IMG/VR virus record: IMGVR_UViG_3300009103_000001
Span: 124,001-188,000 of that record
Strand: one strand, 5' to 3'
Length of the DNA stretch: 64,000 nt
Made by a program: the position numbers and the translations under genes. Shown in pieces: positions 28,213 to 30,879 of the stretch. The notes under the pieces were generated by a model, which was not told the DNA's origin, did no database searches, and worked only from the letters and a program-made list of their open reading frames with translations. The stretch's first letter is position 1, and each line of letters starts with the position of its first letter.

Positions 28213-28232
28213 AATCTAAATAGATTTAGATT
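28213..28232 (-). terminator. Possible weak intrinsic terminator after the DHH gene
   Basis: Inverted repeat aatctaaat-ag-atttagatt followed on the minus strand by a T-rich run; AT-rich stem. Confidence 0.3.
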
Positions 28233-29655
28233 ATTTCTTACTAGAGTCGATTTTTTCTTTTAGTTTCTTTACGAAGGTTTGAGCAAATGCTTTCAAAAAT
28301 CTATTACCATCTTTACCAAAATACATTAAACCAGATATATTAGTAATACATTTATGTCCGCCACTATTTGCCTGTAACATATCCCAACCAGTTACAGATA
28401 ATAATTTTAAAGCCTTTTTTTCATTATTACTTAATGAAGTATATGGTTTAGACATTACTGTTTTTAGTGCTTTTTGCCATCTTTCTATTGTATAATCTTT
28501 TGGGGCCTTTTTAGGCATACTATTTAAACCTATTATGCCGTCATCAGTATCTTCAAACATGGCAATCATATCAGTATAATTAAACCCAACAGATTCATCA
28601 TCAAAAGATTTATGTTTTTCAGCAAAATATTTTATAGTATCTACAGTTATTTTTTTACTTTTTAATCTAGATTTATACACATCTAAAACTTCTTGAGCTA
28701 TTTCACCCAAATTGACACCCTTTAATTCTCTATTAGCTTTGAACGGATTACAAGAAGATTGTAATAACCCTAAAGGCCAAGCAATAACTAAAAAATTAGC
28801 ATCAGGATAATTTTTAAAAGGAACATATCTATCGTAAGAACCGGGTTTAAATAGATTACCACCACCATATTGAGCTATAATACCGTAATCTTCTAGGTAA
28901 GTCACTTTATCACTGTCTTTTTGTGATTGGATATAATTAGCAATATTTTTTTTCATAATATCAGGAGAAACATACCCTTCTTCTTTAGCTAATCTAACTA
29001 TGTTTAAATAAATGTTTAATAGAGATGGTGTTGATTCTAAAACTAGTCTTTCTAAGAATCTTGGTTTATTTTTATAGGCTAATAAAAGTTTATTTGTTAC
29101 TAAGGCCATTATTTTTTTATTTTTAGATAATTCTTTTTCTTTATCTAATTCAAAAATATAAGTCATAACATCTTCTGGTTTAATACCCATTTTAACAAAA
29201 TCAGCAGAATCAACTGTTGATATCATTTTAATATCAAAATCTGGAAATATATCTGTTGGTGAAACTATTTGTGAAATAGTTTCTACGTTAGACCTAGATT
29301 GTCTAAAAGATTTTGAAGCTTGTTTTTCAGCACCAACTTGTTTATCGTGATGGTCGGTATGGACTACAAACATTGGTTTACCGTGAGCAAAGTCAACTAA
29401 CACAGGCATTATATCACCCTTAGCCGAGGGTTTTTTTATGGCAAACTCTTTATCACCATATTGTATAACTTCCGCATCAACAACTTTAATACCATTATTT
29501 TCTAAATAATTTTTCATAGCTAAAGCTGTTGTAACACCATCTAAATCTTGGTGAAAGTATATTTTAGCTTTATCATATCTATTAGATAAATTACGCATAT
29601 TACGTAAACCACTTTCACTTAATATACTACTTAACATGTTTTCTTTTAATATCAT
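28231..29655 (-). CDS. DHH/DHHA1-family phosphoesterase
   Basis: HQDLDG (motif I), VDFAH (II), TDHHD (III), C-terminal SGGH. Confidence 0.75.
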   Translation of the reverse strand: MILKENMLSSILSESGLRNMRNLSNRYDKAKIYFHQDLDGVTTALAMKNYLENNGIKVVDAEVIQYGDKEFAIKKPSAKGDIMPVLVDFAHGKPMFVVHTDHHDKQVGAEKQASKSFRQSRSNVETISQIVSPTDIFPDFDIKMISTVDSADFVKMGIKPEDVMTYIFELDKEKELSKNKKIMALVTNKLLLAYKNKPRFLERLVLESTPSLLNIYLNIVRLAKEEGYVSPDIMKKNIANYIQSQKDSDKVTYLEDYGIIAQYGGGNLFKPGSYDRYVPFKNYPDANFLVIAWPLGLLQSSCNPFKANRELKGVNLGEIAQEVLDVYKSRLKSKKITVDTIKYFAEKHKSFDDESVGFNYTDMIAMFEDTDDGIIGLNSMPKKAPKDYTIERWQKALKTVMSKPYTSLSNNEKKALKLLSVTGWDMLQANSGGHKCITNISGLMYFGKDGNRFLKAFAQTFVKKLKEKIDSSKK

Positions 29656-29659
29656 TTAT

Positions 29660-29667
29660 TATAAATA
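29660..29667 (-). promoter_or_regulatory. Candidate phage late promoter TATTTATA
   Basis: Upstream of the DHH gene. Confidence 0.5.
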
Positions 29668-29837
29668 TTTCATTATATAGTAAATAAAAAATTACGTTAA
29701 AAAAATAACTGTATACGTTGGGAAAGTATAGGTAACTTTTATATTATTTTAATACTATATATGTATAAAAAATTAACTATGGAAAATAATATAAATACAC
29801 TAATTGTTGAATTGATAATCGATATAAATAATAAATC

Positions 29838-30257
29838 ATGAGAAAACTAAAATTAATTATATTACTATTATTAATACCATTTTTTAGTATTAAAACACAA
29901 AATGTAACAAAGTATAGAGTTGTTGCCGTAAGTTTTAATAAAAACGTTATTAGTGTCTCAAATACAATATCTGTAGTAAAACCATTGAGATTATACGCTC
30001 CAAATGTTTTTTCACCCGATGGTGATGGGATAAATGACCATTTTGAGGTTAAAGGTGTTGGTATAGAAGAGTTTGATTTAGAAATTTATAATAGATGGGG
30101 ACAATTAGTGTATAAATCTGACACACTTTTAGCTTGGAATGGTGAATATAGAAACAGACCAGTACCAATGGGTACTTATGTTTATCAAGTAAGGGCTAGA
30201 AATTATGATGGTTCTGATATAATAGTTAAAGATGGTACTGTAACATTAGTACGTTAA
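29838..30257 (+). CDS. Signal peptide plus T9SS type-B (gliding-motility-associated, CHU_C-like) C-terminal domain protein
   Basis: Sec signal MRKLKLIILLLLIPFFSIKT-Q; YAPNVFSPDGDGINDHF...IYNRWGQLVY...WNG...GTYVY...GTVTLVR. Confidence 0.85.
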   Translation: MRKLKLIILLLLIPFFSIKTQNVTKYRVVAVSFNKNVISVSNTISVVKPLRLYAPNVFSPDGDGINDHFEVKGVGIEEFDLEIYNRWGQLVYKSDTLLAWNGEYRNRPVPMGTYVYQVRARNYDGSDIIVKDGTVTLVR

Positions 30258-30457
30258 CAATCTTCAGATAATTCAATTAATTTATCTAAATATTCTTTAG
30301 CTTTATATAAATCTTGTTTTCCATTTTTATGTTTCCATCTAGTAACATATTTAACAATATTACCCTCAAAAAAATCAAGATTATGTGAGTAGGCATAATC
30401 CCACATTTCAATACCAACATTATAATGATTTGGGTGTTTTACTTTTTCTTTTGACAT
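30254..30457 (-). CDS. DUF3310-like small phage protein
   Basis: VKHPNHY...GNIVKYVTRWKHKNGKQDLYKA. Confidence 0.75.
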   Translation of the reverse strand: MSKEKVKHPNHYNVGIEMWDYAYSHNLDFFEGNIVKYVTRWKHKNGKQDLYKAKEYLDKLIELSEDC

Positions 30458-30495: not shown

Positions 30496-30503
30496 TATAT
30501 TTG
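30496..30503 (+). promoter_or_regulatory. Bacteroidota-type -7 promoter box (TAnnTTTG)
   Basis: TATATTTG 22 nt upstream of the ATG at 30526. Confidence 0.5.
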
Positions 30504-30525: not shown

Positions 30526-30879
30526 ATGAAAAAATTATTATGGTTAGACGATGTTAGGGACCCATTTGTGATGTCACAATGGTTATTACAATGGGCGCCA
30601 GAATATTACTACGAAAAGGATGAAGGAACCCATGAAGTTATTTGGGTTAAACATTATGATGGATTTGTAGATTGGATACAAGAAAATGGTTTACCAACTG
30701 AAATTGGATTTGACCATGACCTTGGTAGAACATTAAGTGGTATGGATTGTGCTAAGTGGTTGGTCGACTATTGTATCCACCATAATAAAGAAATACCACA
30801 ATTTTTCGTACAAAGTGCAAACCCTGTTGGTAAACAAAATATAATAACATTACTTAATAACGCTAAAAAACATATATAA
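30526..30879 (+). CDS. Stand-alone receiver-like protein (cyclic-phosphate-processing receiver type)
   Basis: LWLDDVRDP, FDHDLG, SGMDCAKWL, QSANPVG. Confidence 0.7.
   Translation: MKKLLWLDDVRDPFVMSQWLLQWAPEYYYEKDEGTHEVIWVKHYDGFVDWIQENGLPTEIGFDHDLGRTLSGMDCAKWLVDYCIHHNKEIPQFFVQSANPVGKQNIITLLNNAKKHI

What the first reader, a model, noticed from the sequence alone, without database searches (positions are those of the whole stretch)
29838..30257. Near cargo-less T9SS type-B substrate: a candidate phage decoy for the host secretion/gliding machine
Seen: a Sec signal peptide ending before Gln, only about 30 residues of passenger (YRVVAVS...SVSNT, resembling the tail of an FN3 domain), then a complete gliding-motility-associated CTD. 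Established: type-B CTDs route SprB-like adhesins through the Bacteroidota T9SS with PorP/SprF partners, and gliding/T9SS mutants of Flavobacterium can be phage-resistant. Inference: the phage exports a stripped CTD to occupy or jam T9SS/PorP, removing surface receptors (superinfection exclusion) or halting motility. It could instead anchor a phage peptide on the cell surface.
Basis: partly seen in the sequence, partly recalled or inferred. Interest (0 to 1): 0.8.

Follow-up and report, generated by a model that had tools for sequence, protein, structure and literature searches.

The report
Phage-borne cargo-less T9SS sorting domain
A 210-kb marine phage of Bacteroidota carries a small gene that encodes only an export signal and a complete type-B secretion/anchoring domain; it was copied from host genes in which this domain is a separate subunit of a two-gene surface adhesin, so the phage probably uses it to occupy the host's adhesin-anchoring protein.

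Summary
ORF 29838..30257 (+) encodes 139 aa: a Sec-type signal peptide with predicted cleavage before Gln21, about 30 residues, then a type-B T9SS C-terminal domain (CTD) well above the curated cut-offs. The window is part of a 210-kb myovirus-like marine phage.

The short "passenger" is not cargo. It is homologous to the last (F-G) beta-hairpin of the FN3/PKD-like domain that precedes the CTD in long type-B adhesins, and it is nearly invariant there. The protein is therefore signal peptide plus the whole extended sorting module.

The architecture is not a recent decay product. A large family of 130-170 aa proteins shares it, in cells and in at least three phage lineages.

In marine Flavobacteriales the closest relatives lie in a conserved operon. 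A PKD-repeat passenger without a CTD ends exactly before that hairpin; the mini-CTD follows, then a PorP/SprF shuttle.

The phage carries only the CTD subunit. It is 66-72% identical over the last 100 aa to cellular copies. The same phage also has a second, unrelated small type-B CTD protein.

Best reading (inferred, untested): the phage protein mimics the host CTD subunit and occupies its shuttle, changing what the infected cell displays. A decoy or exclusion role is plausible but unproven.

The parts
29838..30257 (+). Complete gene for the 139-aa mini-CTD protein, stop codon included
   Evidence: ORF list and sequence. Identical protein found on 5 contigs. Kept nearly unchanged in marine and cold-seep runs; the three in-gene differences shown were two synonymous changes and V138I.
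29838..29897 (+). Codons 1-20: Sec-type signal peptide, MRKLK n-region, LIILLLLIPFF h-region, predicted cleavage Thr20|Gln21
   Evidence: Hydropathy 3.43. Gln aligns with the small-residue-then-Gln site of all family members. Not tested with SignalP.
29898..29987 (+). Codons 21-50: F-G beta-hairpin remnant of an FN3/PKD-like domain (Y26 R27 A30 S39 S41 N42 invariant), part of the extended type-B sorting module
   Evidence: Invariant columns in A1 and nearly invariant in A2, which includes long proteins. Collinear with the end of the last FN3-like domain of long proteins. PKD_4 in P0083 runs up to the CHU_C start. pLDDT about 90. The whole model, hairpin included, superposes on the C-termini of long PKD+CHU_C proteins at TM 0.73-0.77.
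29997..30254 (+). Codons 54-139: type-B T9SS C-terminal domain (CHU_C / TIGR04131)
   Evidence: Pfam 67.8 bits, NCBIfam 53.0 bits. Foldseek matches to the PorZ CTD and to substrate CTDs bound in the SprA translocon.
29656..29837 (.). 182-bp AT-rich divergent intergenic region upstream of the gene; presumed promoter region, no promoter identified
   Evidence: The gene is a lone + strand gene between - strand genes. Sigma-70 and Bacteroidota -7 motif scans were uninformative. In a brine-sample variant, 29752-29912 is replaced by 89 other letters.

Best explanation
The gene is a host-derived, stand-alone copy of the CTD subunit of a split type-B T9SS adhesin.

Shown:
- It encodes a signal peptide plus the complete extended type-B sorting module (F-G hairpin plus CHU_C beta-sandwich) and nothing else.
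- It sits in the replication-gene region of a 210-kb phage.
- Its closest relatives are cellular mini-CTD genes. In marine Flavobacteriales these lie between a CTD-less PKD-repeat passenger and a PorP/SprF shuttle gene.

Inferred mechanism:
1. Sec exports the protein and signal peptidase I cleaves before Gln21, leaving a 13.5-kDa protein of 119 aa.
2. The T9SS takes it up and hands it to the PorP/SprF-family outer-membrane shuttle that serves this CTD subfamily. Type-B CTDs stay bound there uncleaved.
3. With no passenger, its only possible activity is occupancy. It competes with the host's own CTD subunit or adhesin for that shuttle, and perhaps for the truncated last domain of the passenger.
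4. The infected cell's surface display of that adhesin therefore changes.

The likeliest payoff for the phage is loss or masking of a surface receptor. That would give superinfection exclusion, or protect progeny from adsorbing to debris. Detachment or loss of gliding would be a side effect.
For: Identity and architecture.

The hairpin is part of the conserved module.

The short form is conserved. 58 similar-sized homologues. 70 of the best 150 library representatives are 200 aa or shorter. 84 of the 100 nearest Atlas clusters are CHU_C-only, with representatives of about 144-155 aa.

Cellular operon passenger(no CTD) - miniCTD - PorP_SprF was found in three diverged clades, with the same split point.

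Over the last 100 aa the phage CTD is 66-72% identical to cellular mini-CTDs. It is only 36% identical to the phage's own second CTD protein. In F. johnsoniae, shuttle cross-talk was seen at 68% and above 44% identity, but not at 43% or 26% (PMC12618676). The CTD alone sets secretion and final destination.

The phage carries neither a PorP/SprF gene nor a truncated-FN3 partner in the 76 kb examined.

Small type-B CTD proteins are enriched on viral contigs: 35 of 76 complete ORFs are 210 aa or shorter, against 3 of about 77 in cellular genomes, Fisher p 3e-10. Some are a signal peptide followed directly by the CTD, 109-117 aa. One phage can carry two or three different ones.

The gene is maintained across samples; the three in-gene differences shown were two synonymous and one conservative.

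T9SS-secreted adhesins such as SprB are thought to be Flavobacterium phage receptors, and T9SS or gliding mutants are phage-resistant (PMC9804748).
Against: - No experiment and no transcript evidence: no RNA run was listed as holding the gene.
- The host is unknown, so it is not known whether it has the split operon or the matching shuttle.
- Working type-B secretion signals in F. johnsoniae were 150-235 aa (PMC12618676). The mature protein here is 119 aa, so T9SS transit is not assured.
- Free-standing cargo-less homologues are conserved in cells, near lpxC/fabZ, a lipid A acyltransferase and UvrA. The architecture therefore has a native cellular role and does not by itself imply a decoy.
- Competition versus substitution cannot be told apart from sequence.
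Confidence: 0.4

Rival explanations
1. Host-function replacement, like an auxiliary gene. The phage copy works as the host CTD subunit does. It would cap or load the PorP/SprF shuttle and, through its F-G hairpin, carry the host's CTD-less PKD passenger to the surface. Adhesion, gliding or T9SS integrity would then persist while host gene expression is shut down.
For: The hairpin residues are conserved in the phage copy: Y26, R27, A30, S39, S41, N42. CTD identity to cellular subunits is 66-72%. The cellular split operon is conserved, so the subunit has a positive function. PG1035 was proposed to be a stabilising cap for PorP (PMC9143113).
Against: Phage copies in three clades have only 4 residues between Gln+1 and the YRV strand. 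Split-operon subunits have 13, so part of the loop that joins the passenger's domain is missing. Phages carry several unrelated small CTDs, which suits titrating several shuttles better than topping up one host protein. The query sits on a long terminal branch of 0.51.
Confidence: 0.25
2. Trans-acting export adaptor for a phage-encoded partner. The hairpin completes a truncated Ig-like domain of a CTD-less phage protein and takes it through the T9SS to the cell surface.
For: The cellular operons show that passenger and CTD can be encoded apart, with the break inside one FN3-like domain. Phage-encoded T9SS cargo with type-A CTDs has been reported (PMC7468147).
Against: A profile of the pre-hairpin part of the domain finds nothing in the window, L042 or L014; best E 0.36. 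The gene stands alone between genes on the opposite strand. Only about 76 of 210 kb of the phage could be read.
Confidence: 0.1
3. A small exported beta-sandwich protein whose role does not involve the T9SS, for example binding an envelope glycan or protein in the periplasm. The CTD would be used as a generic Ig-like fold.
For: The mature length of 119 aa is below the experimentally sufficient type-B signal length. A 112-aa CTD protein of F. johnsoniae, Fjoh_0547, is released without SprA or PorV (PMC7712824).
Against: All conserved CTD blocks are intact and the HMM is covered nearly end to end. Cellular relatives sit next to PorP/SprF genes.
Confidence: 0.1
4. A functionless hitch-hiker: a captured host gene fragment on its way to being lost.
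For: It is a lone gene in a divergent intergenic position, moron-like. No promoter was recognised.
Against: The frame is intact, with an identical protein on 5 contigs. It is nearly unchanged in samples from different habitats, with silent or conservative differences. GC3 matches the phage genome: 0.136 against 0.12-0.25 for neighbouring genes. At least three phage lineages keep the same architecture.
Confidence: 0.05

Closest known systems
Type-B T9SS substrates and their PorP/SprF shuttles in Flavobacterium johnsoniae (SprB/SprF, Fjoh_3952/Fjoh_3951 and others; PMC12618676, PMC9143113)
   Same: Sec signal peptide. C-terminal TIGR04131/CHU_C domain with all conserved blocks. The preceding FN3-like hairpin is conserved. 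Cellular relatives are encoded next to a PorP/SprF gene. The CTD is expected to stay attached to the shuttle.
   Different: No passenger at all. Mature length is 119 aa, against 150-235 aa for signals shown to work. It is encoded by a phage with no shuttle gene nearby. In the cellular relatives, passenger and CTD are two separate genes.
PG1035-PorP-PorE complex of Porphyromonas gingivalis (PMC9143113)
   Same: A type-B CTD protein bound uncleaved to PorP at the cell surface. It is non-essential for secretion and was proposed to act as a cap for PorP, which is an occupancy-type role.
   Different: PG1035 is about 50 kDa and has a passenger. It is cellular, and no competition role has been proposed for it.
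Phage-encoded T9SS cargo in 'Cryophage' (Bellas et al. 2020, PMC7468147)
   Same: A phage of Bacteroidota encodes proteins with T9SS sorting domains, presumed to use the host system. A superinfection or competition role was suggested.
   Different: Those proteins carry type-A domains on enzyme cargo (endoglucanase, GH39, PA14). Here the domain is type B and there is no cargo.
Receptor-masking superinfection-exclusion proteins of phages, such as T5 Llp acting on FhuA (from general knowledge, not tested here)
   Same: A small exported phage protein proposed to bind a host outer-membrane protein and so block receptor function.
   Different: No sequence or fold relation. There is no lipobox and no Cys in the protein. 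The target would be a T9SS shuttle reached through the secretion pathway itself.
PorA of P. gingivalis, a small CTD protein that signals to PorXY (PMC7712824)
   Same: A small T9SS CTD protein whose role is regulatory or structural rather than enzymatic. Two cellular mini-CTD loci also have a response-regulator gene next door.
   Different: PorA has a FimH-like N-terminal domain and is 246 aa. It binds PorV and is linked to A-LPS, unlike type-B substrates. No homology beyond the general CTD fold.

Membership tests
T9SS type-B sorting domain proteins (TIGR04131 / PF13585 CHU_C) | HMM match above the curated cut-off | tested here: met
   PF13585 67.8 bits (cut-off 27); TIGR04131 53.0 bits (cut-off 35), profile 3-83 of 85. 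The type-A model is below its cut-off (16.3 vs 23).
T9SS type-B sorting domain proteins (TIGR04131 / PF13585 CHU_C) | Domain lies at the extreme C-terminus | tested here: met
   The match ends at residue 137 of 139, and the protein ends ...GTVTLVR like its relatives.
T9SS type-B sorting domain proteins (TIGR04131 / PF13585 CHU_C) | N-terminal Sec signal peptide | tested here: met
   Positive n-region, 11-residue hydrophobic core and Gln at +1, as in all aligned homologues. Judged by hydropathy and alignment only; no dedicated predictor was available.
T9SS type-B sorting domain proteins (TIGR04131 / PF13585 CHU_C) | CTD beta-sandwich fold | tested here: met
   AF2 pLDDT 89.8. Foldseek hits to the PorZ CTD (5m11) and to substrate CTDs in SprA complexes (8glk_D, 8gl8_D). 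No solved type-B CTD structure exists for comparison (PMC12618676).
T9SS type-B sorting domain proteins (TIGR04131 / PF13585 CHU_C) | Gene linked to a PorP/SprF-family shuttle gene (9 of 12 in F. johnsoniae) | tested here: not met
   No PorP/SprF homologue in the window, L042, L013 or L014. Cellular relatives are linked to one. Orphan substrates also exist in F. johnsoniae.
T9SS type-B sorting domain proteins (TIGR04131 / PF13585 CHU_C) | Secretion signal long enough to work (150-235 aa in tested cases) | tested here: inconclusive
   The mature protein is 119 aa. It contains the whole block conserved among relatives, including the hairpin. No tested signal this short is on record.
T9SS type-B sorting domain proteins (TIGR04131 / PF13585 CHU_C) | Secretion depends on the T9SS and a cognate shuttle, and the CTD is retained | not testable with these tools
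   Needs expression in a host with and without sprA/gldNO and the shuttle.
Mini-CTD family: signal peptide + F-G hairpin + CHU_C, 130-170 aa (no description found in the held literature) | Same three-part architecture with invariant YR..A...S.SN hairpin | tested here: met
   Alignment A1; 40-66% identity over 86-100% of the length to 58 proteins.
Mini-CTD family: signal peptide + F-G hairpin + CHU_C, 130-170 aa (no description found in the held literature) | Operon with a CTD-less PKD passenger upstream and PorP/SprF downstream (split-adhesin subgroup) | tested here: not met
   The phage gene stands alone between genes on the opposite strand. No partner was found. It has 4 rather than 13 residues between Gln+1 and YRV.
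Phage receptor-masking / superinfection-exclusion proteins (functional class) | Blocks adsorption or entry of further phage when expressed | not testable with these tools
   A functional class with no shared sequence signature. Needs adsorption and plating assays.

The most novel reading that the evidence does not exclude
Bacteroidota have two-gene type-B adhesins. The T9SS sorting and anchoring domain is made as a separate secreted subunit. It joins its CTD-less passenger by supplying the last two strands of the passenger's truncated FN3-like domain. Phages have repeatedly captured this detachable subunit, trimmed its linker, and use it, often several kinds per genome, to uncouple host adhesins from their PorP/SprF shuttles. 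This would be a secretion-pathway-borne form of receptor removal.
Probability: 0.25. Interest if true: 0.85.

Novelty: new variant of a known kind. Interest (0 to 1): 0.62.

Why it matters
Every T9SS substrate described in the papers read here carries its sorting domain in cis. A conserved operon in which passenger and CTD are separate genes, broken inside one domain, would mean the signal can be supplied in trans. That bears on how the translocon and shuttles recognise folded substrates. It would also give a natural minimal type-B signal of 119 aa.

On the phage side, T9SS and gliding mutations are the main route to phage resistance in Flavobacterium. A phage gene that enters this pathway with nothing but the sorting domain makes a testable claim: phages actively edit the T9SS-displayed surface of their host.

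Small type-B CTD proteins also appear common on viral contigs. If that holds, this would be a widespread strategy in marine Bacteroidota phages that I did not find described.

Tried and rejected
- Near-identity DNA search of the phage collection: no match. The polymerase is only about 25% identical to Salinibacter phage polymerases, so no cultured relative gives a host.
- Promoter search: the sigma-70 consensus scan was at background level. The Bacteroidota -7 motif TAnnTTTG is absent from the 182 bp upstream and not enriched in the window.
- A terminator-like palindrome at 30161-30176 lies inside the coding region and lacks a T run; treated as chance.
- Transcript evidence: no RNA run was listed as holding the gene.
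- PorP/SprF gene or further CTDs in the window: none.
- Phage-encoded partner with a truncated FN3-like domain: none in the 76 kb available.
- PorA-like regulator idea: rejected as membership. PorA has a FimH-like domain, binds PorV and is linked to A-LPS, unlike type-B substrates.
- 'Recent truncation of a longer phage gene': rejected, because the short form is conserved and broadly distributed.
- tRNA scan for host clues: no tRNA.
- Kulkarni 2019 (PMC6755757) could not be read.
- Complex prediction with PorP/SprF is not possible with the single-chain tool.

Full report
**What is there**

Window 29838..30257 (+) is an intact ORF of 139 codons. Residues 54-137 match the type-B T9SS sorting domain. 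PF13585 CHU_C scores 67.8 bits against a cut-off of 27, and TIGR04131 scores 53.0 bits against 35, covering profile positions 3-83 of 85. The type-A model stays below its threshold.

The N-terminus has a positive n-region (MRKLK) and an 11-residue hydrophobic core, followed by ...IKT|Q. The Gln aligns with a small-residue-then-Gln site in every homologue. This is the usual signal peptidase I site of Bacteroidota substrates; that last point is from general knowledge, and no dedicated predictor was available. The mature product would be 119 aa, 13.5 kDa, without cysteine.

An AlphaFold2 model built on 60 sequences has mean pLDDT 89.8, with about 90 or more from residue 21 onward. The top PDB match is the C-terminal domain of PorZ, and substrate CTDs caught in the SprA translocon also match.

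**The setting is a phage**

The window encodes a tail sheath, virion structural proteins, an SNF2-type helicase and a family-B DNA polymerase distantly related to those of Salinibacter phages. It is part of IMG/VR contig 3300009103_000001, 210,157 bp.

The gene is a lone + strand gene in the replication-gene region. It lies between a DHH-like gene plus polymerase and a DUF3310 gene, both on the other strand.

- The same protein occurs letter for letter on five contigs.
- The region is held by marine, cold-seep and brine runs. A cold-seep contig covers 28823-32500 with 21 differences.
- The three in-gene differences shown were two third-position silent changes and V138I.
- Its GC3 of 0.136 matches its neighbours.

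**The 30-residue 'passenger' is part of the sorting module**

A search of 1.84 billion representatives aligns query residues about 20-139, not just 54-139, to the C-terminal 115-120 residues of many long proteins of 470 to 3229 aa. Y26, A30, S39, S41 and N42 are at least 90% conserved in an alignment that includes 17 such long proteins.

In those proteins the stretch forms the last two strands of the FN3/PKD-like domain that abuts the CTD. In P0083, Pfam PKD_4 runs up to 10 residues before CHU_C, and the alignment shows the whole domain. Predicted structures of long PKD+CHU_C proteins superpose on the entire query model, hairpin included, at TM 0.73-0.77.

The piece is conserved as part of an extended type-B module. 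This fits the published finding that type-B signals extend upstream of the annotated domain (PMC12618676). The protein is cargo-less, not nearly so.

**It is a family, in cells and in phages**

- 58 proteins of 91-171 aa share 39-66% identity with the query, most over 82-100% of its length.
- 70 of the best 150 library representatives are 200 aa or shorter.
- 84 of the 100 nearest Atlas clusters are CHU_C-only, with representatives of about 144-155 aa.

Cellular contexts:
- Downstream of lpxD-lpxC/fabZ-lpxA.
- Next to a lipid A acyltransferase.
- In a Segatella copri MAG between LysM and UvrA genes.

Phage-like contexts:
- A Tara clade with ClpB-like, HSP20, methyltransferase and ThyA genes.
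- A contig of small unknown ORFs.
- IMG/VR contigs with ribonucleotide reductase or a phage sigma factor.

A maximum-likelihood tree puts the query in an unresolved clade with cellular and phage-like rows. Two further phage clades lie elsewhere. Three phage/cell label changes are needed, although well-supported branches force only one.

**The key cellular context**

In three diverged clades of marine Flavobacteriales the mini-CTD gene lies in one syntenic operon: a large PKD-repeat protein with no CTD, then the mini-CTD with its own signal peptide, then a 340-aa PorP/SprF protein, then Usp, AhpC, DPPIV and so on. In one clade a LytTR response regulator is inserted before PorP/SprF.

The passenger proteins end at the same point in all three clades: ...GVNRYE(V/I)QKL..GQW..I...INN.I(V/I)(D/N)(P/E)-stop. 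This is after the E strand of their last FN3-like domain. The mini-CTD then resumes with the E-F loop, the F-G hairpin and the CTD.

Unsplit long proteins (P0140, P0073, P0180, P0185) are collinear with passenger plus mini-CTD. This looks like a conserved two-gene adhesin with the sorting domain supplied in trans. That the two parts associate is inferred, not shown. I did not find such an arrangement described in the literature held here.

**How the phage copy compares**

- Over the last 100 aa it is 70-72% identical to the cellular P0008 clade and 66% to P0020, the subunit of the split operon.
- In F. johnsoniae a shuttle accepted a non-cognate CTD at 68% identity. Three CTDs more than 44% identical to each other share one shuttle.
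- The CTD alone determines secretion and final destination, and it remains bound to the shuttle.
- The phage has no PorP/SprF gene and no truncated-FN3 partner in the 76 kb readable here.
- Split-operon subunits have 13 residues between Gln+1 and the YRV strand. The three phage clades have 4, and free-standing cellular copies have 6-7.

**A wider pattern**

The same 210-kb phage carries a second small type-B CTD protein of 193 aa. It has a signal peptide and an 85-aa Cys-containing domain, and its CTD is 36% identical to the first.

Among the best 80 IMG/VR loci, 35 of 76 complete CTD-bearing ORFs are 210 aa or shorter. The figure is 3 of about 77 among the best 80 loci from species-representative genomes (Fisher p 3e-10). 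All but one of the 35 begin with a signal-peptide-like N-terminus. Several are a signal peptide followed directly by the CTD, 109-117 aa. Related large phages carry two kinds a few kb apart. BFVD also holds viral CHU_C proteins of 108-199 aa.

**Interpretation**

What is shown:
- A phage-borne, host-derived gene under constraint, encoding a signal peptide plus the full type-B sorting module and nothing else.
- Cellular relatives that are the CTD subunit of a split adhesin with a dedicated shuttle.

What is inferred: export by Sec, uptake by the T9SS, and docking on the shuttle that serves this CTD subfamily.

A cargo-less CTD can only act by occupying binding sites. I consider the most likely role (0.4) to be competition with the host subunit or adhesin for that shuttle. 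This would change the displayed adhesin, which is a probable phage receptor, given that SprB-type adhesins and T9SS function are tied to phage sensitivity in Flavobacterium (PMC9804748).

Rival readings:
- The phage copy substitutes for the host subunit (0.25).
- It acts as an adaptor for an unseen phage partner (0.1).
- It has a role unrelated to the T9SS (0.1).
- It has no function (0.05).

The main weaknesses are the unknown host, the absence of expression data, a mature length below any tested type-B signal, and free-standing cellular homologues whose own function is unknown.

**Comparison with what is known**

By every sequence criterion it is a member of the type-B CTD family. It lacks the linked shuttle gene and any passenger. 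Phage-encoded T9SS cargo has been reported once, for type-A domains on enzymes (PMC7468147).

A cargo-less type-B protein in phages, and the split cellular operon it derives from, appear undescribed. I rate it a new variant of a known kind.

Noticed in passing
L003:1-4991; L173:4195-9449; L175:3-5539: Conserved cellular operon in marine Flavobacteriales: a CTD-less PKD-repeat protein that ends inside its last FN3-like domain, then a separately encoded signal peptide + hairpin + type-B CTD, then PorP/SprF. It looks like a T9SS adhesin with its sorting domain supplied in trans.
   Followed up: partly
L042:5686-6267 (same 210-kb phage contig, about 120 kb from the window gene): A second small type-B CTD protein of 193 aa, with a signal peptide and an 85-aa Cys-containing domain. 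Its CTD is only 36% identical to the window's. Related large phages (L047, L053, L086, L089) share this neighbourhood.
   Followed up: partly
L086:5941-6270; L089; L053:11230-11561; L048:546-881; L083: Viral-contig ORFs of 109-117 aa that are a signal peptide followed directly by the type-B CTD, with no hairpin at all (for example MKTLVVLLLLISSSLFGQ then DIFVPNAFTPDGDG...).
   Followed up: partly
window 29752-29912: In a brine-metagenome variant of the phage, a contig replaces this stretch (upstream region plus codons 1-25, the signal peptide) with 89 other letters. The rest of the gene is nearly identical. The replacement sequence was not shown.
   Followed up: no
window 30526-30879 (+): The next + strand gene encodes a cREC_REC receiver-like domain (PF20274, 77 bits; phrog_1479). 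It has the only Bacteroidota-type -7 motif nearby (TATATTTG at 30496). Two cellular mini-CTD loci also have a response-regulator gene directly downstream (L003, L093). This may be coincidence.
   Followed up: no
window 30254-30457 (-): A DUF3310 gene (nucleotide-kinase-associated phrogs) converges on the mini-CTD gene, and the two stop codons overlap by 4 bases.
   Followed up: no
window 28231-29655 (-): A 474-aa protein with no PHROG match and only a sub-threshold DHH hit (19.7 bits, cut-off 28.1). It sits between the polymerase and the mini-CTD gene.
   Followed up: no
L001, L007, L008, L095, L010, L093: Free-standing cellular mini-CTD genes recur near lipid A or lipid synthesis genes: the lpxD-lpxC/fabZ-lpxA cluster, Lip_A_acyltrans, and PlsX with an acyltransferase. 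No explanation.
   Followed up: no
window 30161-30176: A perfect 16-base palindrome, AGTACCAATGGGTACT, inside the CTD coding region (codons for PVPMGTY). The terminator scan flagged it on both strands; probably chance.
   Followed up: no
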